A program made the translations under genes and the position numbers. DNA of 64,000 nucleotides from Auanema rhodensis. Lineage: Eukaryota; Animalia; Nematoda. The stretch is taken from NCBI GenBank assembly GCA_964057225.1, contig OZ059899.1, positions 14,570,001 through 14,634,000 on the forward strand. Reading direction: 5' to 3'. Of this stretch, positions 3,665-32,700 are shown piece by piece. Under the pieces are notes generated by a model. The model was not told where the DNA came from. It worked only from the letters and a program-made list of their open reading frames with translations, and ran no database searches. Every line of letters starts with the position of its first letter. Positions within the stretch are counted from its first letter, which is position 1.

Positions 3665-5961
3665 ATCAAGATGTTCTATTTAAACGAAGTTATAACTCAT
3701 TTAGCCATCCATAACATATAGTCCTTTCAAATAAATTTTTTTTCTTACCGAAACAAAGAAAAAACGAATATTTCCGTATTTGAATCTATAAATTTGAACT
3801 GTTATAAGTATTTTTCTCATATTTTCACATCTCTAAGAATCATTGAAATCACATAAGAGTATAAAAATAAAGTAATGGCTGGGAAAATTTTTCCAAAAAA
3901 AAAAAACATTTTCACAGCAGTAAGTTAAAGCCAGAAAATTCTACGTTAAGCCTCAAAACAATGTTAACGCAATGCGAATCTCATATTGTGTCATGTTATT
4001 TTGTGCTATTTTCAGAAGTCCAAAGTGAGTAAGACTCAGGATGAAGAAGAACGGACCAAGGTTCTTGTTTTTGACTTTTTTTTTTGTTTCTTTAAACATA
4101 TATTTGTCTTGTTGTCTTGGGTACAATGATATATGTTTAAGGATTTCCAAGTGAAGTGTAATAGCTTAACTCTGGAAATCTCTTGACATCATTATCTTGT
4201 CATCTTATTTTGTTTGTTGTTGTTTCAAAAAGTCTTCAAAAAATGAAAAAAAGCAGGAAGTAAAAGAAGAAGGAAAAGCTCTGCTCACACATGTCTTTGT
4301 TACGTTCTTGCCGTCTTTCAGGTATCTGTGATTGCCATGGAAGAAGACGAGGAGATGCGTCGCCTGGAGCGCAAAAAACGCTCACAGGAAGATATGGTTG
4401 CTGATTTCGTGAAGATTCTGGAGCAGATGAGTGAGTATTAAGCTAGTCCTATTCATAAATTACGTTTATTCTTTCATTGATTCTGCTATATATGTATATG
4501 TTGCCAATTACTTTAATGTTTCAGTGAATCCCCGACAGGCTGTTACCTCATTCGTGTCAGCTACGACCGGCCTGGGAGCTGTCATTGTTGCTCTGCTCTA
4601 TCTGAACAATGTGCCAGAAACAGCAAGTAAAGCCAAGGAATTGATTGTTGTACTGATAGTTTATGGTTGGTTATTATCTTTCTGTTGAATCTCGCTGTGC
4701 TGTTACTGAGAGCGTCACCAACGTTTTCGTCCAGCTAGCTTGCTTGGTTCTGTTTTTTGAGAATTTTGAATGAGATCAGTAAATCGCTGTGCTCATACAG
4801 AATAGTCTTATCATTGAAACCATATAAGAAAGGAATTCATATAATATTTTGCAAGATTAAATGTTAATAACAGGATTCATAATTCCGGCTTGTATGACTC
4901 AAAACAATTATTGCAATATTTGCCTTTTTTTGCCTCATTATCGTCACATGTTTTCAACCTTTTTATCAGCTGATTATCACTGATTTTAATTTTGCAACCA
5001 ATAGTTCAGTGATTATGAATTACAAATTTCAAAATGAATAGATAAATGGTCTTAAATTATTTAAATGTCAAGGTTAAAATTGAATAAATCAACAAAAAAA
5101 AAAAGATATTTGTCTTCAGAAACTCTTAGAACTTTTTCTTCGTTCAGGTATACTTCAAGTACTTTTGGCTACTGCCTTCTTTGTAACATGTATGCAAACA
5201 TCAATTGCTGTTTCTAAAGGAGTTAAGGTTTGTTAAAGCTTATTATTTTCTGAAAATGTTGAGAAAAAGTGAATTTTATAAGGAATAAGACTGAAAGAGG
5301 TGATCAGAAAAAAAACATTCGAAAGGATAAGGATGAGGAAGTTCGAACGCCTCACAACTATACTTGAGGCTCAGATTTCAAGGAAGATGATCGCTTTCAG
5401 AGGTCGTCGTATTCTTTCAATTATTGTGAATTAAAAGAGAATTGGAAACAAGTTAAAATGGATAGCGAGTACGAGAGAAATTGGGAGGGCGAGAGGGGGA
5501 GGATGTGGATCGGCTGACTGACTCTTGAGTGCCACCCTCTAAATCCATAAAAGATTTACTCTTTCTGTCAGACCAGAAAAAAACACATTTCTTTTGATTT
5601 CAGGATGCTTTTCAAATTGTTGTCGGTCTACTGGTAGCACTTGTATACGTAGCCATCGCGCTCATATCATTAGTTGTCGGAATATTCGGTACGTCCTTCT
5701 GATAATGCTCAAGGATTAGATCATGATAAAGCAATGTTCATAATCTTAGCATAAGCTGTTACAGCATTTCTTCAATCTTCACTAAAACTGTTTATATTAA
5801 TCATTTAAGGTTTTTATAAAACTATCTGCTTGGTTAGCTATGTGGAATACATCGATCGCACATCATTGTTCTTCTGTCCACCACCTGTGTTCTATACTTC
5901 ACTCTGTGTTTTCATACTTCACATTATACTTATTGTACTTAAATGCTGCTGTTGTAAATAA
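2672..5961 (+). CDS. Small four-transmembrane protein with a C-terminal Cys cluster, TMEM272-like (multi-exon)
   Basis: Hand-spliced, phase-consistent GT-AG exons: 2672-2716 (MYKIHRQGQLNNEKV; alternative first exon 3198-3230), 4016-4024 (KSK), 4322-4430, 4525-4665, 5148-5227, 5604-5688 and 5810-5961. The product has four hydrophobic segments and ends FFCPPPVFYTSLCVFILHIILIVLKCCCCK*. AATAAA lies at 6018-6023. The family name is inferred from architecture, and the 5' end is uncertain. Confidence 0.8.
3575..3662. repeat. (CT)n microsatellite
   Basis: Near-perfect CT run; representative of dozens in the flanking zones. Confidence 0.95.
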
Positions 5962-6735
5962 TTTTAATTGAAAAATTACACAAAATCGAACAAAAAAATC
6001 ATTTCATTGTTTCAAGAAATAAAATTTTCAAATTATAAATTAAGAATCTAATATACACATCTACTGATTCATCTCATCTCATTTCTTTATTCTCAAGAAT
6101 ACTGAGTTCGTTCTTCGATCAAGCATAAGAGATAAACTGTCTTCTCTTTTTTCCTATATAGTAGTAAAGCACATCCTCTCTCTCTCTCTCTCTCTCATAC
6201 GTATAGACATCATCAAATACATGTGAATTAAACGTCAGAATGTTGGATTATTGATGATATGAAGACAAAAATAATCGAGGTATTTTGCTTCTTATCATAT
6301 CATATATATATGAACTTAAAGTTAATATATCATGTAGAATATATTATTTATTCAATCTTTCCATAAATTACAATGAATTGAAGAGGAAAGTACATAGAAT
6401 GTATTGTTTCTTCAAATTCAATTGAAAACTAAAATCAAAAAACTCTCTCACATTCCTCACTCTTAATGCACCGAAATTGTGAAAAAAAAAGATTTGTTCC
6501 TAATTTGATATACAAGCACTTTAATGCATGTTCATGAATTCCACATGACTCTCTCTCTCTCTTTCTCTGTGTGTGAAACAACCGCTCGTGCCATCTGATA
6601 TCGTAAAAATTCAAAAAACCCCGGTTTTCACGTGCAAATGGTATCACGTGAATTAAAAAATGAATAAAACGTAGCTCATCTTATCAGCATCTCATTTGAT
6701 TTAAGAGGTTTTTGCAATAAAAAGCTTGTTTCATA

Positions 6736-6739
<4 letters not shown>

Positions 6740-6775
<36 letters not shown>
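6740..6775. repeat. (TA)n microsatellite
   Basis: Perfect TA run. Confidence 0.95.
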
Positions 6776-6779
<4 letters not shown>

Positions 6780-9700
6780 AATAAACTGATAGATACTTCT
6801 AAACACATCTGCTATATGTACTTCATCTCACTTTAAACTTCAGAATTTCCCGCCCATTCCAATTTTTGAATTGGAAACAGCCGTTTAAGTGCAAATTTGT
6901 ATTATGATATGTACTTATATGTATGTATACTTAGTTCAAAATACATATTTTAACATCCCTTAGGGTATTTTCTTGTTAAACTACATTTTTCCTTTTTTTG
7001 TTTGCATTTCAAGCTTGTTTATTAGTAGGTACAACTAGCCGGTTGATGACCATAAACAGCTGTTTTTTGTTTTTTATTTTTTTGTTGCACTTTAAGGTCA
7101 ACTTATTTGTTTTTAAAAATAATTTTTTTATTTCACTACTCTAAGTTCATTATATTTTCTTCATTTATTATTACGTTTTAACGATCTTTCTTTCAATATT
7201 TTACACTTCTATGTATAACTTTTTGTAATTTTAATTCATTTTTTCACCCTATTAATAGTTTCTGTGTTACTTTTCTTTATTTCAATATGGACTATAATAA
7301 TGATGTAAAGAAAGAGAAGAAGTAGTAGTTTTCTTATTACAAATGATTTTTAAAAGAAAATTTATCTTAATTTCTTATCACGTGTAGAAATTACATGTGA
7401 ATACTTATAATTCTTTTAATTCCTATTAAAAAGTTTAAAATTTTATAGAAATGAATGAAAGCCAGACTGAAACATGTGATGGATTAGATTGTTTGACTCT
7501 TTGAACATAATTGATCTTTTGAACAGGAGCCAATAACATCATACATGGGTTGATTGTCATACATAGATTCATAGATAGAGATAGATGATCGATGAATTGT
7601 GATCATCTAGTTGAAACAATTCACTCATTTATTCAAATTTTCTATTTTTAAATGACAGATTAATCAATTTTTGATTATAATTTCTCATATTTTTCTGTTT
7701 GATTTTGTGAGATTGATAGATTGAGAGAAGAGAGAATGTAAAGAAACTTCATGATCATCACGTTTATCAGTGGAATTACTTTTAGTCGTCCGTAAGAAGA
7801 GATTAGACCAAAGTTGTCACCTATATAGTAGTAAAGCACAATCTCTATTTCCTCAGATATTCTCAATTTCTGTTTTTTTTTGATATCCCATAGTATTATT
7901 AGGTGATGTTATGTGTCTGCTTCCTTGTTGTTAAGAAGATTAGAAGGCATACTATCACCACATTTCCCATATGTCATTTAGATATGACACTTATTTCCTT
8001 ACAAGATGTTTGAAAGGAAAATTGAAGTGCAAAAAGTTGTTAAGTCTCTTACAGCTTCTTATCAGATACATATGTGTTGAATAAGAAGTAGGAAAGACAC
8101 ACACACACATATATATGTATATGAATAGGTAAGAGAGGGAGATAGAGAGAGAGAGAGAGAGAAAGAGAAAGAAGATGAAGCAGAAAAGAAAGGGGAAGAA
8201 AAAGCCTTTTCGGTGTGTTAAAATTTCCTGCTTAGTCTTTGTTCTAACCACGTGACTAGTGTCTATCTATATCAATATTTCTATCTCTTATTAATGTAGA
8301 AGCTTCATGATTTTTAATATTTAATTGAAATATAAATATATCAAATCCACTATTCATCATCTATTATGACCTTCAGCTTATCGTCATGTTCTCCCTCTTA
8401 ATCTCTTTACACCCCTTTCTTTCTACCTATATATCTATGGCTTTCTTTCGAATTGTTCTCGCAGTTCTCTACCAATCAAAAGAGGTACTGTACATACTTA
8501 TAAGTAGGGATGTTCAATTCTGGGCTAGAAAAAGTTTGAAATTCCATGAGAATATGCCATAAACTCATGACCTCTATGCTTCCTTCTCTCTCTCTATCTT
8601 TCTCTCTGTCTCCCTCCTCTTTCTTTGATAAACCGATTGTGCTATCAACTAAGCTGTCATCTGAAAAAAGGTTTATCTTTTGATCTTACATGTTCCGCTC
8701 CATTCTACAGCAACAGTCTTGTTTATTGAATTTTTCGTTCATTTCTGAATTTCTGCAATTGTAGACGACGCAGAAGATGACGTCAATCGACCACTTTTCT
8801 TACACCTTCATTTGATGAATTAGATGCCGCTTTCTAATACAATAATCAAAAAATAGTCTGATAGCTTCTGTTGATCGAACCTTTTCGTTTGCATCATGCT
8901 TTGTCAGAGTTTTCATCTTCGCGCAACATGCTGAAAACCGGCAAAAATGGCCGGCTGACTGCTGTCTTCTGGCGTTCGCTCTCCATTCCGATCGTCCGTG
9001 GACTTCATGATCAGTTGGCTAAACGTCTGTGCAGCCAGCAAAATCACTTAGTTTGTCATTCAGTCAGGTATGTGGATGTACATATCTGCACAAGATCACT
9101 TCTTTAACAGTTTTTTTGTCTTCACATCGCTATCCTTTGTCTTGGTTTTTTCTAGTTCAATGACAGTTCTACCGAGAGAGAGAGAGAGGGAGAGAGAGAC
9201 AGACTGACAGAGAGGGAAGGAGAGAGAGAGAGAGAAATTGGAGCTGTGCAATCAACAGCACATTTCCTTTCTTGCTTCCTATCCTATGTATATTCTTCTA
9301 GAATTCTCATAAATATAATCAACAAGAATTGTTTTTCCGTCTTGAATCTACAACTACTACGTCTACTACGATTACTTCTCCTACAACTACTTCAATGATC
9401 TCGTTTCCTATCGACCACACATAATCATAACATCATTAACCTGAAGTCTGATGTAATCTTAGATCACTGATTGTATTTGATTTTTCATTATTTCACATTT
9501 ATCGAAACTTGTTGTTTATATCACTTTACCGCTGATATATAGAAACGTTTTCTTATAACTTGTTTGTTTTTTTAAACTTTGGTCACCTGAAGTATGGTAT
9601 TAGAAAGCCATTTAGAAACGATTTAAATGTTTTTTAAAAAAATCCAATATGTAACTTTCATCACATGTCTTCAAAGTTTTGTCCTCTCGTACAATTTATT

Positions 9701-11011
9701 TGCTTCTCTTACGCTAGTGAACTTAGGTTTGAACTTTGGAAAACAGAAAGCAGATTTGCGAAATGCGCTCATCTTTCTGGGGAATTCCTTTGCTAGATAG
9801 CGGCAGCACAGAACATGTTTTGCATATTTCCTTTTCTGATTTCTCTCTCCACCTCTGTCTGCCTTTCTTAAAATTTCTCGTAATTTTGACCGCTTATCTG
9901 AATTCGTAATAGAACCACGTGCTTGGAAAGAAAAGAACAATAATGCTGTCTGTATCGAAAGGATAGAGAAAAGTAGAATAAGAGGGGGAGGGAGAAGGGG
10001 GAGAGATACAGAGAGACAGAGAGATAGCTGCATGCATGTAGTGGTGGTGATGATGATGCTAAGTGAATCTTCCTTATTCTTTCATCTTCCTCATCTTCAT
10101 GACTATAATCATTAAGATCTTCATTATTTTCCTTTTATGGTCTGCCAAAACGAGAACTAAGATTACTTCTCCGATACTCTACTGCTTCTTGCCTTTTTCT
10201 GGCACAAAATAGGGGGAGGAGGGGGAGTTGTCAGAGGAGGCGATAGATAATAGAGAGGTAAGATAGAGGGAAAAGAAGAAGACATAAAAGAATAGCTGAT
10301 AACGGTCTTGCAATCTTTCATCTGATTATGACTAGAATCTTTTCCCCATTCTTTGCCTCTTCTTTTCCTACTTTACCTTTAGTCCTCTTTCCTTTCCTTC
10401 TCCATTTCTTCCTCTTCTTCCTCTTCCTCGTCTTCATTTGTTTTGCATTTCTGTGATCGAATACAATTTTGTTCGAAAAGGGCAAAAAAGAATTCGGCCA
10501 TCTTCTCTTCGTTCCCCATTCTCGCCTCTCTCTCTCTCTCTCTCTTGCTCCGTAGTCTTCTTTGTATTCCTCCTCCCATCTGCTACAACTTATTTAACTT
10601 CTCTAAACTTCATCATATATGGTTAAGCATCCTATTTCAACTCGATACGTACAGTTAAACACTTCTAATCGAATAAATGGTGGCAATGGTGTTTTCTCTT
10701 TTCATTGATCCAGTTCAAAGTCAATGAGAGATATGTTTATATAGATTCTGAAGCACCCCTTTTACTGGCATCATCGTTACAATCAGTGTGTGATTGTCAT
10801 TGTAATCGTGATATACCTACTACTTTACTATCATTCCTATTATCGTAGTCATATAGTCTTTTTTGACATAAAATCAGTTATTTTTGAATTAATTGAGCTA
10901 ATACTCTTCTATCGGTTTTCCAATTTTTGTTTTTTAAAAAAATTTTAAAATTCGAATGTAATTTCATTTATTTCGTTGAATTTTTTGTACTTCATTCCTA
11001 ATTATTTTTGC

Positions 11012-24317: not shown

Positions 24318-26001
24318 TCAACGGTTGGCTCTTCGTTCTTCATCTTCCATGATTCTGCGTTCGACTGAAAATTGAAAACCAGCCATTTCCATGAGAGTTT
24401 TGTCTGGATTATCATCCCAATTTCCAGGAAGTGGCACCTAAACGTTTTCCGTTTTTAGTCATTACGAGATGAGAAAAAAAGAAAACCTTCTTGTGTTTTT
24501 CAGCCTGTTTTGATTGCCATTCTTTCAATTTCTGTTGCTCAAGCTTTGTTTTCGCTGGTGCACAGCCCCACACCTAAAGCGTATATTGTATACTCGCCTA
24601 ATCTCGTCAGACTACTACCTCAACAGCTCGAAGCTGAGACATTTCTTTATCAAGAGTGAAAATACTTTTGAATGATAATCCAAAAGCTGATTGGCGGATT
24701 TTAAAATTACAATAGACAGCCGACGATTCCTCCATTTTCAATAATGCTGGAGAAATTTGCAAATACATAGTAGAAGGTCCTCCAAATCTTTTACTACCAT
24801 GTCTAAACGTTTATTCATGTTTTCAGCAAAAAAAGCTTTAAATACCTCCATTCTTGATCGAGAGCTAACACAATAACTTCTCCTGTGAGAAGTTGGAATA
24901 TTGAAACCGTTGGACCCCGATAATCGAAAACATTTGCTTCAAATCTATTCACACTAACACCCTGTGTCACAGAGTTGTATAAAGGAGTCCACTGTTTCAA
25001 AGTTTGTCCACCCTATAAATATCAAGGAAAAATGAGAGTAGGAAAAATGTATGCAAAACCTCATCTGTGTTGGGGAAATATACAGCTGGCAGACACGCCT
25101 GCACATACCACATTTGAATTGAGGATAGAATATCAGATGATAAATCAGGTAAACTCTGAAATGATGAATTCAAAAAGAAATAACAAAAAAAAAACTGACC
25201 AAATCATAGTTCAAACATTTGTGTAAAACTTTATTTTGAACATATTCTGCTAATTTTGGAATATTTTGTTTGTACCAGTTAAAAATATCTCTTTCAGAAG
25301 TACCCTGTTTTGACTGCAATTTATGTCCATTTTGCAATATACTTGTACGTACAAACATACAATTAGGTCAGCAAGAAGAGCAATAAACCGTTGATCTCCG
25401 TCTACAGCTATAGCTCCTGCAGATTCAGAACATACTTTAATCAAATGATGTACAGGCTGGCAAACTGAAACACAAATTCTTTTTCTATATATATATATAT
25501 ATATATAACAATAATATTACTTGAAACATATATATCGTGTGAAGGTCCCATAAGACGAACAACCATCTTACCAAATTGTTCTCGTGATACTGTTCCATCT
25601 TTATTCGATTCTGTAAAATTAAATTTTATTCATATCAATTAGAACTCATTCATATAAACGAATGCAACCAGCATCCATTTGTTGAAAACGCAAAATAAAG
25701 TCCACGTGAACACGTGAACGATGATTACACAATAATTTAAATTAGTAGCCTACTTCCTGAATTGCCTTGATCAGTGAAAAACGCCCACAAACTTTCTGCC
25801 AAATCTTCTCCAAAGGCATCCTGAAAAGAGAAATTGTCATGAAAGTCTTGCAATTATAGAACGAACCGTGAAATGAGCAAAGGTTAGTGCATTTCCGTTA
25901 CCTAAATTTTCGAAAGCAGTAGCAATTCGAGGATCTGTCCGTGGAGTAGGTTGTGCAGATGTTTGTCCACTTTTTTGAGGTTTCCCAGCTTCATTACCCA
26001 T
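24318..26001 (-). CDS. TLDc-domain protein with N-terminal MG (possible myristoylation) and an EF-hand-like segment; MEAK7/EAK-7/Rtc5-like group
   Basis: Spliced product starts [12 protein letters not shown] and contains [12 protein letters not shown]. TLDc core reads [30 protein letters not shown]-terminus [14 protein letters not shown]...RRANR*. The introns checked are canonical. Confidence 0.88.
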
Positions 26002-26512: not shown

Positions 26513-28193
26513 ATGAGGTAAACCCACTACCGCGGATCAAGCTATAACTTCGTTCATTTAGCACCGACGGCAGTAAAATAAACAGTATGACTCCCCAGAA
26601 ATCAGAAGATCAAGCAGCAGAATGTAATTTTCTTTCATATTCCTGAATTTAAGCTAATTTTTCCTTCTGATTTTAGACGAAAATACTGGCGATTTTTCAT
26701 GGACAATCATTCATACTAATCAAGATGGAAAGTAAGTTATTATTTGTGTAATTAGAACTAGTTTCTTCGAAAATTGTTACAGAATTCCCATAATGGGCTA
26801 TGGAAATGTTCCCATACCATCCCAGCATAACATTAATCTACTTGGAGAAAACCGTTCAATAAGTATAAGATGCATAACATGGAATATAAATGATAAAGTA
26901 AGTTATAAAAAATGTTCAAGTTTTAAGAAAAGTATCAAAAACTTTTTCAGAACGTCAAAACTTTAACAAAAATTACCGAACACTTGTGCAAACTGCCGCT
27001 TGAACAGAGAGGAGATGTTATATGTATCGCCCTCCAAGAAATCCCACCCTCAGCCACGTAAGAAGATATTCATTTTACTTTTGCTTTATCTTTGGTATTA
27101 TCAGGAGATTTCATGAAGAAGCTCTAAAAATCTTCAACAAAGCTATATCGGATACCACGCATTGCTTGTTTCTGTCACACAGGTCATGGAGCCAAATGAT
27201 TTTAATCTACATTAATAAAGCTCATTTACGATATGCAACAGGTGATTAGCAAAGAGAAATTATTAATAATATTATATCTTAACTACATATTCTTAGAACC
27301 AAGTATCAAATTCGTACCTTCTGCCCCTATACCGAAACCATTGCGAACCAAAGGAGGTATAGGTATATGCTTCAGGTTATATCAACGATGGATAGTACTT
27401 ATTGGCTGTCATTTATCACGTATGTTCAAGCTTTCTGACATTTGGATGCTTAACAAGATTCTTCAGATGGAAGCATGCAAAATAGAATTCAAGATTATGG
27501 CAAGATCATCCGTAATCTTAAATTCGCGAACTTGCAACAATTCAGTGGAATGGAAAGTGTTTTAGCTGCAGATGTAAGCAAGTATTCGATGAATCGCATG
27601 ATAATGAAATTCAGGCTGTGATATGGTTCGGTGATCTTAACTTCAGGCTTCATTCAGATCTAGGGATAATGTGGAAACAAAATGAAGAAAACAATGTAGA
27701 AGATATCAGAAGAGCATTAGATTTCGATGGTCTTAATCAGTCACGACAGAAAGGTTAATCTTTTCTATATTATGGCAAAGATTTATGATTCTCTTTATAG
27801 CATTAGCATTCATGGAATTTGAAGAAGGTAATATAAACTTTCCTCCAACACACAAATATGAACTGAACCAAGATGAATATGTAAAGGATCGAATTCCATC
27901 ATATACGGTAGGAAAAAAAGATTTTCCGAATTTAAATCGATATGCATATCACAGGATCGTGTACTTTATTATTCGCAAAACCCTATATGGTTAAGTGTTA
28001 GAGATTATAATACCATTACGGGACCAACTCAGTCAGATCACAGACCTGTTTATTGTCTACTAAGGTGAGTGCTTAATACAAATTAACAGTTGATTTCTTT
28101 CATTTTCTTTTCAGATTAAATGTTATAAATAATCCAATACCACAGAATTCTTCACAAGATTCTGCTGATGTCATTATACAACAGCCCACATAA
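26513..28193 (+). CDS. Inositol polyphosphate 5-phosphatase, INPP5E-like (probable inpp-1 orthologue)
   Basis: Motifs RCITWNIN, CIALQE, RTKGGIGICFRL...IGCHL, WFGDLNFR, FPPTHKY...RIPSYTDRV and SDHRPV. The first coding exon is ATGAG|, then a 44-nt intron, giving MSTDGSKIN. Stop at 28191-28193. Confidence 0.9.
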
Positions 28194-28708
28194 TTCTAGG
28201 AAAGTTAGTATTGCTAATTATAAAAGTTTCAACGCGAAAGTATAAACTATTGCCATAATAATACATTGTCATATTGAATTGAAATCAATTAATTCCTAAT
28301 ATAAATATTAATGCTTGAGAATAAATTATGTTATTTGCATCTGATTTATCTTTTCAAGTAATAATTGAGGGTGGAAAGACTGGTGTCTAAATGATTAATA
28401 TAAAATTTTCAAGGAAAAAACAATATTATCGACATAAAATTTATTGCAGAAAACGTGAGGAAAAGCTTTACTTTTTTTCCAGGAAAAAATAAAACTAATT
28501 ATAGAATCGAATTGAAATGATTAAAGCTTAAAAAACATGGCTACTAACAGCTGCAACTTTTTTAATGAAACGGTACGCAAAAACAAGACAATGTGTAAAA
28601 GTTACGCACTGCGTACAATATTTATTGAAGGATAGATTTTGCATAATTTTTTAAATTACTTCAGGGTCGTTGTTTTTTTTTTTAATATTATTTCAATTTT
28701 AAGGTGAA

Positions 28709-28906
28709 ATGATGTTCCCCGGTGGTCCAAGTGGTGCTGAATTACAGAAGGCTGCTGCAGAAAAGGCCAAGAATGATGTTGGAACTATTATTACTTTCGC
28801 CATTCTCATTGAAGCTGGTAATACCTTAATTTATTATTTGAAATATAACTTTTTTTTAGTTGCCTTTGGATGCTCTTATTTCAAAATGGACGGAATACTT
28901 ATTTAG
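28709..28906 (+). CDS. 51-aa single-pass microprotein, candidate Tom5 (TOM complex small subunit)
   Basis: TTTTAAG acceptor 5 nt before the ATG, a 42-nt GT-AG intron at 28818-28859, and AATAAA at 28936-28941. Product MMFPGGPSGAELQKAAAEKAKNDVGTIITFAILIEAVAFGCSYFKMDGILI. The gene structure is well supported; the Tom5 identity is inference. Confidence 0.75.
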   Translation: MMFPGGPSGAELQKAAAEKAKNDVGTIITFAILIEAGNTLIYYLKYNFFLVAFGCSYFKMDGILI

Positions 28907-29047
28907 AAACTTTCAAAGATTCATAGTTTTTTTTTAATAAAGTTGTTATTGCTGTGAAATTCACAATTTCTACTGATATCTGTTATGAACAGTTTATATT
29001 TAACAAAGTTATTTTAAAAATTTCAAATAGTTTTATCTTAGTTAAGT

Positions 29048-29539
29048 ATGGACGGAGGCGATCCACAAACACTACGCTTTTTGCAGCAACTTCAAGCTGA
29101 AACTCAGCGCCAGAAGTTCACTGAGCAGGTTTAATCATTTTCTGCAACTTCATTAAACATCACATTATAGGTCCATACCTTAACTGGCCGTTGTTGGGAT
29201 GTTTGCTTCGGTGATTATCGCCCACCCAGCAAAATGGACGGCAAAACCCAAACTTGCATTCAGGTACATAATTTGGCTTTATATCGATTGTTGCCTATTT
29301 TTGCAATTTCTGTTCATTAGCTCATGGTTGTCTTCTTAATTCTTTCTCTAGCCCCAACTCACTTTATTGATTTTACATATATTAGTATTAGATGCGAATA
29401 CAAAAGATTTTAAAATAAAACAAACAATTATTCATTTAACTTAAAATATTTTTAGAATTGTGTTAACCGCATGATTGACGCAGGCAACTTCATGGTAGAA
29501 CACTTGCAAAAGATGGAAGGAGGAAAAGGAATGGTTTAA
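29048..29539 (+). CDS. ddp-1: Mitochondrial small Tim chaperone Tim8 (TIMM8/DDP)
   Basis: Three exons giving QRQKFTEQVHTLTGRCWDVC...TCIQNCVNRMID, a twin CX3C motif with typical Tim8 residues. Confidence 0.95.
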
Positions 29540-29780
29540 TATTTTGCTATGTAGTTGTTCTTATTTCAATGATCTTTCTTATGATTTACATCTTCGTTAT
29601 GTGTTAAAGGTTGCCTTTTCCTTGTTGCTAGTTTGTTAGAATTATAGATAAATTTTTTCTTATATTGTCTGTTACTTGAATTACATATTTACGTACGAAA
29701 GGTTTTCTTAGCCTTCTATATATATCTGACATGTTGCGGTTTCCTACATAAACAAGACATTTAAGCTTTACCAGAATTCG

Positions 29781-32700
29781 ATGACGACTAAATTACGGGG
29801 CAGTCGCCTCGAAACCGAAGTCGATCGTGCTAGGACCGAGGGTAACTGGAAGCGCTTAACTGAGCTTCTTCCCTCTGTTCGTTCAAAGCAATCGGGAATG
29901 GATGATGCTGTAGAGCTTCTTGAGGCAGAGATTGAGCTTGAAACCTTTTTGGATCAACAAGGCGGTAAAAACATATATCACTTTGAAACAAGTGTATTTG
30001 ATTTACAGAAGTGTTAAGACCAAAAGAAGATAATATTGATGTTTTAAAACATGCCGAAACACTTCTTCTTAAATGCCATCAAGACAAAGAAAAAACGTCT
30101 ATATGGCTTGAAGCTCAATTATTATTGGCTAAACTGTATTACGTATCAGCAAATTATGAGAAGGTAAAAGAATAAATAATGTCACTCAATACCTATACTG
30201 TTTTTCAGTCCTTGAAACAAATAGAAAAATCCTGCATGGAATCAGGAAGTACTCCATTCCGAACTCTCAGAGTTTTACGACTTGTAGCTGAAGCTTATGC
30301 CATAAAAGGTAGTGACAAACCTTATCTATAAACTATAATGGAAGTATTGCAGCATTATGCTTAGAAGTAACTGGAGTAGAAGATAAGACAACTCGCAATA
30401 AGTCAGCGTGTTGCTTCGAAAAGGCAGCTGAATTAACGATTTCATATGTTTCTGAATTGGAGAAAGTTCTGGGAAATAGCATGGGAAAGAGTTTGTTCAC
30501 TACTACTCGAAACAATGATAGTATTATATCTGATTCAGCGGTAAACCCACTCACCAATTCAACGACTTCTGTACGCTCGCAAAAACAAGAAAAAATAGGT
30601 GATTTATTGGAATGTTGTCTAGAACGAGTTGCACAACTGCGAGTAAAGGATACCACAGTTGATAGAGTGAATGATCCTGAAGGAATTGAATGGTTTTTTG
30701 CTTTGCTTGCTCTTTTTATAATTTTCTATTTTCCGGTATCGCAAAATTATAACTTGCCTTGGTGATAAGTCGACAGGTGAAAGACTACAACAGAAATTGT
30801 CTCGTCAACTGGCTGAATTGTTGTTTCGTGTTGTTCCTAGTGATTGTAATGATCCCAGCCAAGTATTAAGCACCAAAGCAAAAAACCTAAGGTATTCTTT
30901 ACGATGTTGTTCAATTTACCGATTTTCTGGCAGTTTCTACGCTGGATCTCAACGGGCGTATTTCTCACCCACTTCGCGGACCGAAGAAATTATTCTTTTA
31001 TTACTTATTAGTGAAGTAAGTTCCAATATATTTCTATATATTATATTACCTTTTTAAACATTACTATGTAGTCTATACTCAAAACCGAACATATAATACA
31101 TTGATCCAAGTTATGAAAATGTGTGAAACTTGCGCAAATAAATCCAACCGGCCGCAATTCCGGTTTGGTGTATGGGACATCCAACATTTTCCATATTATT
31201 GATATATTATACGCTTGAACTATCTCTCCCTCACTTCCTTTTCTGGCATGTAGCTATGTTGTGTTGAATTCTGCTTCGTAATTTCATTTCTCATATCATT
31301 CCTTGAGCACTATGCCTTTGCTGAACAAGAACAGTTCCAGTTATTGCTGGGAAGATAACCCATTTCTTTTACGGCATTCCAAGGAAAGAACTAATGCAGC
31401 TGATACGGAGACTGTTGATTTCTCAACTATTCCCGACTGTTCTTTGCCTCCCTTGGATACTGAACGCCAACTTCAAAACATCATGGATTGTATTCTGCCA
31501 CCGTTAGTTTTCAAATCTGAAGAAGATTTCTGGAAGCAGCGTACATCGACAGCGCCTGTAACACGCATGGATATGGCAGCATTAGAAGAAAAGTTCGAGC
31601 ATGAACTTGAGTCTAGAGCAGCCAAGCCTTTTGGTATTTGTCCTATTCGTAGACAAATCTACGATCAACTTTTTGGTGATTGTTTTACTTAGTTTTCATG
31701 AAACTTGTGGCCTTATTCAGATGAGCTCATTCGTCAGACGACTGTTTCATGCTCAGAACGAGGTTTACTCCTTCTACGGATACGTAACGAGATAAGGATG
31801 ACGTTTCTGGCATACCAGACGTTGTTAGAAAGTGCTATAAGCTATGGCTTACGTAAAGCACTTTCTGTTGAAAATGATCAATCACGTGCTGTATATGAGC
31901 GAGATGAAGAAAGATCAAAGAATTCACAACTTATGCTTAAGTATTGCTTCCTCATTTCTAAATTTGCAATTGTTTGGAGGTTTTAGGATAGCACAGCTTG
32001 AAAGACGCGCAGCTGCTGACAAAAATGCTGCGGAGGAAGAGCTTGAAATTTTGTCGCAACGAATGAAAGAAGAAAATGAAAGACTCATAGATGCAAATAA
32101 GACTCTGAAAAATCAATTACAAAGCATTTTACAATTGGATCAGTTGAAGCCATTTGATCATGACACTACTAAACAGCCAGAAAAGAAATGAAATTTTGTC
32201 CTCATAATGAATCTATGTCCAATAAACCATGCTTAAAATCTCATTTATTCCTCCATTTCACAGATTTTCATTTTAATTTAAATCCTTCTCTTAGGTTCTT
32301 GCCACAAGAGAAGTAGTTCTTAGCCGTAGCGACGATCTTGCTGCTTCTAGACTGCAGTCTATTAGAAATGCCAAATCTGTTTACAATCTTCTAACTCTGG
32401 TAAAACTATCAACTTTTTCAATTCCTGTTTCATTCTCATCTGATTATCTACAGGTTCTATCTACTATTCGTCAATATCATTTGATGTCAATTATTTTTGA
32501 AAGAGCTATGAAGTTTGCTAACGAAGATTCTTATATTTGGTATTGTTTTTTTTTAATTTCTTTGAAAAAAAATTGTTTTCTAGGCAACAGTTTGGCCTTT
32601 CTCTTCTTTGTAAAGGACGTTGGCTTAGAGCGGCTCATGTACTTGACCAGAGCATCCAAGTGGATAGCTCGGAGGGTCCATTACAACATTTACTAGCATC

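What the first reader, a model, noticed from the sequence alone, without database searches (positions are those of the whole stretch)
28709..28906. Candidate nematode Tom5 microprotein heading an operon with Tim8
Seen: a properly spliced 51-aa gene 141 bp upstream of Tim8 in operon-like spacing. Its 42-nt intron is in frame and stop-free, so ORF finders read through it. Known: Tom5 proteins are about 50 aa, start MF(G), have a charged helix (recalled fungal pattern PS.EEL.AAE.EA) and one C-terminal TM, and help import small Tim proteins. From memory, a tomm-5 is not among the commonly named C. elegans TOM genes. Inference: this is a diverged Tom5 co-expressed with its client. Caveat: the Pro usually found in the Tom5 TM is absent.
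Basis: partly seen in the sequence, partly recalled or inferred. Interest (0 to 1): 0.75.

Follow-up and report, generated by a model that had tools for sequence, protein, structure and literature searches.

The report
Unnamed nematode Tom5 gene beside Tim8
A real, expressed, two-exon 51-residue gene just upstream of Tim8 is conserved across rhabditid nematodes (in C. elegans as the uncharacterised Y39A3CL.3) and is most likely the missing Tom5 subunit of the mitochondrial outer-membrane import pore, though this rests on weak sequence signals.

Summary
Spliced transcript contigs from four runs remove exactly the 42-nt GT..AG intron (28818-28859), giving a 51-aa product. It lies 141 nt upstream of a spliced three-exon Tim8 gene.

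The gene is single-copy and under strong purifying selection. It has 50-51-aa orthologues in strongylids, Heterorhabditis and Caenorhabditis, including C. elegans Y39A3CL.3. All are unnamed or misnamed, and several are wrongly fused to Tim8 in public annotations.

Tom5 identity is probable (about 0.7), not proven:
- Pfam Tom5 is the only family hit, and it is below threshold (E 0.025).
- Protein-language-model neighbours of two orthologues are Tom5 clusters (0.92-0.93).
- Size and tail-anchor shape fit.
- Family profiles find no solved Tom5 chain.
- The Tom5 membrane proline is absent; an invariant membrane glutamate stands there instead.

An operon is plausible. Spacing is about 100 nt, the genome has SL2 genes, and both mRNA 5' ends sit at AG acceptors. 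The order Tom5-like, Tim8, TTC7 is the same in Haemonchus. SL2 use was not shown, and the linkage is absent in Caenorhabditis.

The scan had not noted this before. It is a new member of a known kind, of moderate interest.

The parts
28697..28703 (+). Probable trans-splice acceptor (ttttaag) of the 51-aa gene.
   Evidence: Transcript contigs in three runs start at 28698 with one extra unaligned letter and one mismatch near the end. This fits the genome's SL1 3' end ...GTTTGAG joined at 28703|28704. The letters themselves were not visible.
28704..28817 (+). Exon 1: 5-nt 5' UTR, then CDS 28709-28817 (36 codons plus the first base of a split codon).
   Evidence: The only Pfam hit is Tom5 PF10642, E 0.025.
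28818..28859 (+). 42-nt GT..AG intron, in frame and stop-free.
   Evidence: The joint 28816/28859 'skips 42, GT..AG (cut +1)' appears in all four runs. The same intron position occurs in Caenorhabditis, Oesophagostomum, Haemonchus and Ancylostoma.
28860..28925 (+). Exon 2: the last 15 codons, stop at 28904-28906, and 3' UTR to at least 28925.
28936..28941 (+). AATAAA poly(A) signal of the 51-aa gene, about 100 nt before the Tim8 acceptor.
   Evidence: Read directly from the sequence.
29040..29041 (+). AG acceptor at the 5' end of the Tim8 mRNA.
   Evidence: Contigs begin at 29040 with 3-4 extra non-genomic letters. Whether these are SL1 or SL2 was not resolved.
29048..29539 (+). Tim8/DDP gene. 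CDS exons 29048-29128, 29171-29263 and 29456-29539; introns of 42 and 192 nt; 3' UTR to at least 29650.
   Evidence: The orthologous part of P0002 best matches yeast TIM8 3cjh_B, E 2.3e-4.
29781..29966 (+). First coding exon of TTC7, the third gene on the same strand, with a possible acceptor at 29775-29776.
   Evidence: TTC7_N, E 2.4e-9. The order is the same in Haemonchus contortus.

Best explanation
The locus encodes a genuine, expressed, tail-anchored 51-aa protein. It is the nematode orthologue of Tom5, the small subunit that packs its long helix against the outside of the Tom40 barrel (strands 9-11) at the periphery of the TOM dimer.

Shown:
- The gene is spliced and expressed.
- It is single-copy.
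- It is conserved with the same length and intron position across Rhabditina, including C. elegans Y39A3CL.3.
- It evolves under strong purifying selection.

Inferred:
- The short flexible N-terminus (MMFPGG) and charged helix face the cytosol.
- The hydrophobic segment (about residues 25-45, with an invariant Glu in its middle) spans the outer membrane beside Tom40.
- The 5-7-residue acidic tail reaches the intermembrane space.

In this genome and in strongylids the gene lies on the same strand immediately before Tim8 and TTC7. The spacing and 5' ends fit an SL1-headed polycistronic unit. Tom5 would then be co-transcribed with a small Tim, whose import depends on Tom5 in yeast. That functional coupling is inference.
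For: Gene reality:
- The splice joint appears in four runs.
- There is one copy in the 181-Mb genome.
- 17 database hits at E<=1e-3 are, apart from one 2,439-aa protein left unexamined, short nematode proteins, and 18 more come from a profile search.
- The intron phase and position are conserved in 7 of 8 loci.
- C. elegans versus C. brenneri shows 15 synonymous and 1 non-synonymous differences.

Tom5 identity:
- PF10642 Tom5 is the only Pfam family reported for exon 1 (E 0.025, model positions 1-34 of 46).
- It recurs for one further orthologue (E 0.11).
- ESM Atlas feature neighbours of the Haemonchus orthologue (ranks 1-2, score 0.93, 207-214 of 256 features; nine hits share that Tom5 family set) and of C. 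elegans Y39A3CL.3 (ranks 2-3, 0.92) are Tom5 clusters. Emr1, Tom6 and TOM5_2 follow at about 0.8.
- AlphaFold2 gives one long helix, residues 9-42, at pLDDT 77. This agrees with the 'long helix' of Tom5 described in PMC9260164.
- The genome has Tom40 and Tom7 but no other Tom5 candidate surfaced.

Operon:
- The genome has canonical SL1 and SL2 genes.
- The gap from the AATAAA signal to the next acceptor is about 100 nt.
- The order Tom5-like, Tim8, TTC7 is collinear in Haemonchus.
- The gene is adjacent to Tim8 in Ancylostoma and Oesophagostomum.
- Fused gene models exist in Cooperia and Ostertagia.

Tom5 is needed for small Tim import in yeast: PMC4263444, PMC9260164.
Against: - The Pfam score (15 bits) is well below the 26.1-bit cut-off, and 10 of 11 full-length orthologues give no Tom5 hit.
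- HMM profiles of 6 and 11 orthologues find no Tom5 chain among solved structures, even at E 10.
- Language-model scores of 0.9 or more occur for 4-10% of shuffled proteins, and the two orthologues are not independent.
- No orthologue has the proline reported as conserved in small-Tom membrane helices.
- The tail is acidic, not basic as in the yeast and human Tom5 sequences as I recall them (from memory, not checked here).
- Fold searches on a single helix were uninformative.
- There are no localisation or interaction data.
- No contig spans the intergenic gap, and SL2 on Tim8 was not shown.
- In Caenorhabditis the gene is not next to Tim8.
Confidence: 0.7

Rival explanations
1. It is a conserved nematode-specific tail-anchored microprotein that is not descended from Tom5. 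It might be another small outer-membrane or ER membrane protein, and it resembles Tom5 only through its size, N-terminal MF-G motif, Ala/Glu/Lys-rich helix and single membrane helix.
For: - All sequence signals for Tom5 are below threshold.
- No solved Tom5 chain is found with family profiles.
- The membrane proline is absent, and an invariant mid-membrane Glu and an acidic tail are present.
- No homologue was found outside clade V nematodes.
Against: - Two different methods, a profile HMM and language-model features, both single out the same a priori family among tens of thousands.
- Nematodes otherwise lack a named Tom5, while they have Tom40 and Tom7.
Confidence: 0.2
2. It is a different small TOM-associated subunit, such as a Tom6-like or Emr1-like protein, rather than Tom5.
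For: Emr1, Tom6, TOM6p and TOM5_2 clusters appear among the feature neighbours at 0.76-0.82. No Tom6 was detectable in this genome with PF15184.
Against: These score clearly lower than the Tom5 clusters (0.92-0.93) and share fewer features (153-170 against 204-214). Pfam reports Tom5 only.
Confidence: 0.05
3. On the operon sub-claim only: the three genes are neighbours kept together by synteny and are transcribed from separate promoters. Co-expression with Tim8 would then be incidental.
For: - No contig bridges 28926-29039.
- The stop-to-ATG gaps in strongylids are long: 323, 820 and about 1066 nt.
- The linkage is lost in Caenorhabditis and at the Heligmosomoides copy.
- The third gene, TTC7, is functionally unrelated.
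Against: - The gap from poly(A) signal to acceptor is about 100 nt here, twice in a row.
- SL2 genes are present.
- The mature 5' ends sit at AG acceptors and carry non-genomic letters.
- The same order and strand are kept in at least five strongylid genera.
Confidence: 0.3

Closest known systems
Fungal-type Tom5 (Pfam PF10642; yeast and Neurospora TOM core subunit)
   Same: It is about 50 aa, with an N-terminal MF-G start followed by a Ser/Glu/Leu/Ala-rich helix and one C-terminal membrane helix. It is the only Pfam hit and the top language-model neighbour.
   Different: The score is below the family cut-off. There is no membrane proline, there is an invariant Glu inside the hydrophobic segment, and the C-terminal tail is acidic rather than basic. 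Tom40 binding is untested.
Metazoan TOMM5 (Pfam PF27930 TOM5_2; human and Drosophila TOM core, PDB 7ck6, PMC7522991, PMC11707698)
   Same: Same length class, tail-anchored helix, and the expected role beside Tom40. This is the family to which an animal orthologue would be expected to belong.
   Different: It is only a weak feature neighbour (0.79). The family is absent from the local Pfam copy, so it was not tested. The nematode proteins look closer to the fungal-type model.
C. elegans Y39A3CL.3 (NP_497458.1, UniProt Q9N416) and C. briggsae CBG15189
   Same: These are direct orthologues: 50 aa, 58% identical to exon 1, with the same intron position.
   Different: They are annotated as uncharacterised or carry spurious names. 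They are not adjacent to Tim8 (ddp-1): none lies within the 10 kb flanks.
Nematode SL2-type operons
   Same: Same-strand genes, about 100 nt between the poly(A) signal and the next trans-splice acceptor, and SL1 and SL2 RNA genes in the genome.
   Different: SL2 on the downstream genes and a polycistronic precursor were not observed here.

Membership tests
Tom5 (TOM complex small subunit) | Protein of about 50 residues. | tested here: met
   51 aa from the verified splice. Orthologues are 50-51 aa.
Tom5 (TOM complex small subunit) | N-terminal soluble segment, then one long helix ending in a C-terminal membrane span (tail-anchor). | tested here: met
   AlphaFold2 on the orthologue alignment gives a single helix, residues 9-42. 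The hydrophobic stretch covers about residues 25-45. Membrane orientation was not testable.
Tom5 (TOM complex small subunit) | Match to Pfam PF10642 at or above the gathering score (26.1 bits). | tested here: not met
   Exon 1 scores 15 bits, E 0.025. One of 11 orthologues reaches E 0.11 and the rest give nothing.
Tom5 (TOM complex small subunit) | Match to the metazoan TOM5_2 family, PF27930. | not testable with these tools
   The family is not in the local Pfam library. It appears only as a 0.79 feature neighbour.
Tom5 (TOM complex small subunit) | Conserved proline in the membrane helix. This is recalled from the literature on small Tom proteins and was not checked in a paper here. | tested here: not met
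   No Pro occurs after residue 10 in any aligned orthologue or in the window's two exons. An invariant Glu (E35 here) lies mid-segment instead.
Tom5 (TOM complex small subunit) | Sequence relationship to Tom5 chains of solved TOM complexes. | tested here: not met
   phmmer and two family profiles against PDB sequences at E<=10 list no Tom5 chain. A profile-profile comparison was not possible.
Tom5 (TOM complex small subunit) | Nearest families by protein-language-model features. | tested here: met
   Tom5 clusters score 0.92-0.93 with 204-214 shared features for two orthologues.
Tom5 (TOM complex small subunit) | Stable association with Tom40 (strands 9-11) in the TOM core complex. | not testable with these tools
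   No full-length nematode Tom40 was available by reference. The genome's Tom40 is multi-exon with stops between the exons.
Nematode SL2 operon | Same-strand genes with a short (about 100 nt) gap between the upstream 3' end and the downstream trans-splice site. | tested here: met
   AATAAA at 28936-41 and an acceptor at 29040-41. The Tim8 3' UTR runs past 29650, and TTC7 has an acceptor near 29776.
Nematode SL2 operon | Downstream mRNAs carry SL2. | tested here: inconclusive
   The Tim8 contigs carry 3-4 non-genomic 5' letters, but the letters were not shown. SL2 genes exist in the genome.
Tim8/DDP small Tim | Tim10/DDP zinc-finger domain with twin CX3C motifs, closest to Tim8. | tested here: met
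   zf-Tim10_DDP hits exons 2 and 3. CWDVC and CIQNC motifs are present. The best solved match is yeast TIM8.

The most novel reading that the evidence does not exclude
Rhabditid nematodes have a remodelled Tom5 in which an invariant membrane-embedded glutamate replaces the usual proline kink. In the strongylid lineage the gene is transcribed in one SL-processed unit with Tim8. That would tie the dosage of the TOM exit-site subunit to that of a small Tim chaperone whose import passes that site, which would be a rare operon pairing an import pore subunit with its own substrate.
Probability: 0.15. Interest if true: 0.6.

Novelty: new member of a known kind. Interest (0 to 1): 0.45.

Why it matters
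C. elegans and parasitic strongylids are widely used to study mitochondrial import stress. Even so, their TOM complex is annotated without a Tom5.

If Y39A3CL.3 and its orthologues are Tom5, a missing core subunit gets a gene name and becomes directly testable by tagging, knock-out, UPRmt reporters and small Tim import assays. A dozen wrong public gene models could also be corrected: fusions with Tim8, intron read-throughs, and spurious names such as 'ATP synthase subunit C' or 'C4-dicarboxylate ABC transporter'.

The finding also shows how two-exon microproteins with in-frame introns escape annotation.

Tried and rejected
- The word-index protein search with the 65-aa read-through found nothing.
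- phmmer of the read-through and of exon 1 against PDB sequences gave no Tom5 chain. Profiles A1 and A4 against PDB also gave none.
- Pfam Tom5, Tom22 and TOM6p scans of the whole genome returned nothing, not even this locus. Those blanks are therefore uninformative.
- PF27930 is not in the library.
- Foldseek against PDB and the Atlas fold search on the single-helix model gave no match or non-specific matches.
- Rfam on the window found nothing.
- The metagenome scan with the family alignment found no relative.
- The third protein search, with a Tim8 query, did not return this species' own Tim8. The transcript contigs could therefore not be fetched to read their spliced-leader letters.
- The bacterial promoter and terminator scan is irrelevant for a eukaryote.
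- Complex prediction with Tom40 was not run. The genome's Tom40 is split by stop-containing introns, and no full-length nematode Tom40 could be reached within the length window of the searches.

- The joined 51-aa peptide of the window was never sent to any tool. I searched exon by exon, used the stop-free read-through by reference, and used natural full-length orthologues from the databases.

Full report
**Observation**

- An ATG at 28709 opens a frame that runs to a GT at 28818.
- A 42-nt intron (28818-28859) ends in ttttttttag.
- The frame resumes at 28860 and stops at 28904-28906.
- The intron is in frame and free of stops, so the mechanical ORF list shows one 65-aa ORF at 28709-28906.
- Removing the intron leaves 36 + 15 = 51 codons.

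The only runs holding this stretch were four runs of one study, and the tool only guessed them to be RNA. Their contigs lack all three introns, so they behave as transcript assemblies.
- In all four, a contig covers 28698-28816 joined to 28859-28925, reported as 'skips 42, GT..AG'.
- A separate contig covers the downstream gene with joints that skip 42 nt (29129-29170) and 192 nt (29264-29455).

That downstream gene has exons 29048-29128, 29171-29263 and 29456-29539.
- It carries twin CX3C motifs and hits zf-Tim10_DDP.
- The equivalent part of an orthologue best matches yeast TIM8 among solved structures (3cjh_B, E 2.3e-4).

The distance from the stop of the small gene to the Tim8 ATG is 141 nt.

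**The gene is real and conserved**

It is single-copy in the 181-Mb assembly.

An exhaustive phmmer of the read-through, given by reference, found 17 proteins at E<=1e-3. I did not examine one 2,439-aa hit. The other 16 are short nematode proteins. They come from:
- Oesophagostomum, Ancylostoma, Haemonchus, Teladorsagia and Cylicostephanus;
- Necator, Angiostrongylus and Cooperia;
- Caenorhabditis brenneri.

A profile search added Heligmosomoides, Strongylus, Heterorhabditis, C. briggsae CBG15189 and, in the same 90% cluster, C. elegans Y39A3CL.3 (NP_497458.1, Q9N416).

Correctly spliced members are 50-51 aa and align without internal gaps apart from one residue near the N-terminus.

I located both exons in eight genomic loci.
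- The intron always interrupts the same codon in phase 1, just after the conserved Glu-Ala.
- Intron lengths are 42, 49, 63, 81, 282, 380 and 890 nt.
- The Heligmosomoides copy has no intron.

Where gene models read through or mis-splice the intron, the extra residues are unrelated between species. This is what an intron predicts.

Codon comparisons, done exon by exon, show strong constraint.
- C. elegans versus C. brenneri: 15 synonymous and 1 non-synonymous differences (dN/dS about 0.01).
- Oesophagostomum versus Ancylostoma: 18 versus 9 (about 0.10).
- Between distant species, synonymous sites are saturated while pN stays near 0.23.

**What the protein is**

None of the orthologues carries a precomputed Pfam domain. 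Their source names are 'hypothetical' or 'uncharacterized', or evidently spurious automatic names. No paper in the library mentions Y39A3CL.3, its accessions or a nematode tomm-5. Supplementary tables were not searched.

Two methods point to Tom5.
- Pfam: scanning exon 1 at E<=10 reports a single family, PF10642 Tom5. The match has E 0.025 and 15 bits, and covers residues 2-34 on model positions 1-34 of 46. One further orthologue repeats it at E 0.11.
- ESM Atlas feature search, Haemonchus orthologue: Tom5 clusters take ranks 1-2 (score 0.93, 207-214 of 256 features), and nine hits share that Tom5 family set.
- ESM Atlas feature search, C. elegans Y39A3CL.3: Tom5 clusters take ranks 2-3 (0.92).
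- In both searches, Emr1, Tom6, TOM6p and the metazoan TOM5_2 family follow near 0.8.

AlphaFold2 on the 11-sequence alignment gives a flexible N-terminus and one helix, residues 9-42, with mean pLDDT 77. This matches the description of Tom5 as a long helix on Tom40 strands 9-11 with a short intermembrane-space end (PMC9260164, PMC7522991). The genome encodes Tom40 and Tom7.

The evidence against full membership is real.
- The Pfam score is far below the 26.1-bit cut-off, and ten of eleven orthologues give nothing.
- Profiles of the family find no Tom5 chain in PDB sequences.
- The proline that I recall as conserved in small-Tom membrane helices is absent from every orthologue.
- Instead, an invariant Glu sits in the middle of the hydrophobic stretch, and the tail is acidic.
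- The feature-search scores have a stated false-positive rate of 4-10% at 0.9 or above, and the two queries are homologues of each other.
- Fold searches on a single helix say nothing.

I put Tom5 orthology at about 0.7, an unrelated tail-anchored microprotein at 0.2, and another small TOM-associated subunit at 0.05.

**Genomic setting and the operon claim**

The genome has a canonical SL1 array and four SL2 genes.
- SL1 is GGTTTAATTACCCAAGTTTGAG.
- Three SL2 genes read GGTTTTAACCCAGTATCTCAAG, and one is a variant.

It is therefore an operon-capable rhabditid.

The small gene's contigs start at 28698 in three runs, with one unaligned letter and a single mismatch that is not listed among internal differences. 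This is what an SL1 3' end (GTTTGAG) joined at the acceptor 28702-03 would give against the genomic ttttaag. The SL2 end would give two mismatches. This is an inference, because the letters were not visible.

The 3' end of the small gene and the 5' end of Tim8 look like this:
- An AATAAA lies at 28936-41.
- The Tim8 contigs start at the AG of 29040-41 with 3-4 extra letters.
- The gap between the 3' end and the next acceptor is therefore about 80-100 nt.

Tim8's 3' UTR runs past 29650. The next gene, TTC7, has an ATG at 29781, a TTC7_N match at E 2.4e-9, and a possible acceptor at 29775-76.

In Haemonchus contortus the annotated order is the same, all on one strand: the 51-aa gene, Tim8, TTC7.

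Stop-to-ATG gaps to Tim8 are 323 nt in Haemonchus, 820 nt in Ancylostoma and about 1066 nt in Oesophagostomum. Fused gene models show adjacency in Cooperia and Ostertagia.

In C. elegans and C. brenneri no Tim8 lies within the flanks fetched, 10 and 4 kb respectively, nor in the 4 kb after the gene on a Logan contig with Caenorhabditis-like sequence. Their divergent upstream neighbour is a TLD-domain gene. The window also has a TLD gene on the minus strand at about 24.8-26.0 kb. Here, however, an inositol-5-phosphatase-like gene on the plus strand (ending near 28193) lies between it and the small gene.

No contig bridges any intergenic gap.

My reading is that a polycistronic unit of Tom5-like, Tim8 and TTC7 is plausible (about 0.6-0.7), and that the small gene is probably its first member. 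Neither SL2 use nor a precursor was shown.

The pairing with Tim8 is specific to this lineage, and the third gene is functionally unrelated. 'Co-expressed with its client' is therefore an attractive reading, not a demonstrated one. The yeast basis for it is documented: Tim9, Tim12 and Tim13 import depends on Tom5 (PMC4263444, PMC9260164).

**Which organism**

The following place it in clade V, nearer to Strongylida than to Caenorhabditis. This is an inference.
- Exon 1 is 61-69% identical to strongylid orthologues and 56-58% identical to Caenorhabditis.
- The Tim8 C-terminus is strongylid-like.
- Gene order is collinear with Haemonchus.

**Limits and omissions**

All searches used exon references, the stop-free read-through by reference, or natural full-length orthologues from the databases.

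Two steps were not possible.
- A profile-profile comparison with known Tom5 or TOMM5 was not done, because no such sequence had a reference and I did not type one from memory.
- The Tom40 complex prediction was not run, because no full-length nematode Tom40 could be obtained by reference.

**Verdict**

This is a confirmed, conserved and expressed microprotein gene. It is probably the unrecognised nematode Tom5, sitting in an operon-like cluster with Tim8 and TTC7. I class it as a new member of a known kind. It is moderately interesting, mainly because it names a testable C. elegans gene (Y39A3CL.3) and exposes many annotation errors.

Noticed in passing
P0002, P0014, P0018, P0003, P0005, P0020 (database proteins); loci L020, L010: Several public gene models for this family are wrong. 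Exon 1 is fused to Tim8 exons in Ancylostoma ceylanicum (EPB79577.1), Cooperia oncophora (KAK6047221.1) and Ostertagia ostertagi (KAK6024786.1). The intron is read through or mis-spliced in C. brenneri EGT57149.1, Angiostrongylus costaricensis and Strongylus vulgaris. UniRef names such as 'F0F1 ATP synthase subunit C', 'DoxX family', 'GDT1 family' and 'C4-dicarboxylate ABC transporter' are spurious.
   Followed up: partly
L017:3001-3156 (Heligmosomoides polygyrus): The Heligmosomoides copy is intronless and has no Tim8 within 3 kb downstream. This could be intron loss with rearrangement, or a retrocopy.
   Followed up: no
window 24800-26001 (-) and 26790-28193 (+): A TLD-domain gene lies on the minus strand. 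Its orthologue is the divergent upstream neighbour of the 51-aa gene in C. elegans and C. brenneri. Here an inositol-5-phosphatase-like gene (Exo_endo_phos2) on the plus strand lies between it and the 51-aa gene, ending about 510 nt before the small gene's acceptor. Whether that gene belongs to the same transcription unit is open.
   Followed up: partly
window 28818-28859 and 29129-29170: The small gene's intron and the first Tim8 intron are both exactly 42 nt, which suggests a very short minimal intron size in this genome.
   Followed up: no
G000:C3:6.74-7.10 Mb; G000:C5:8569074-8569180, C1:13966668, C5:13487481, C3:6361149: There is a large tandem SL1 RNA gene array (at least 51 copies scored, spacing often 252 or 504 nt). 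There are also four dispersed SL2 genes with two leader variants.
   Followed up: partly
G000:C6:8123786-8123896 (+); G000:C5:7079946-7080344 (-); G000:C4:18274598-18275204 (-): Tom7 (47.7 bits), Tom40 and VDAC genes of this genome were located. Tom22 and the metazoan Tom6 family gave no match in the exon-wise scan, but that blank is uninformative.
   Followed up: no
C. elegans locus L016:10001-10435: Y39A3CL.3 overlaps the annotated 5' end of the divergent TLD-domain gene (4837-10260, minus strand). From memory, ddp-1 (Tim8) is named Y39A3CR.4, on the other half of the same YAC clone. This would suggest that the two genes are still in the same chromosomal neighbourhood.
   Followed up: no
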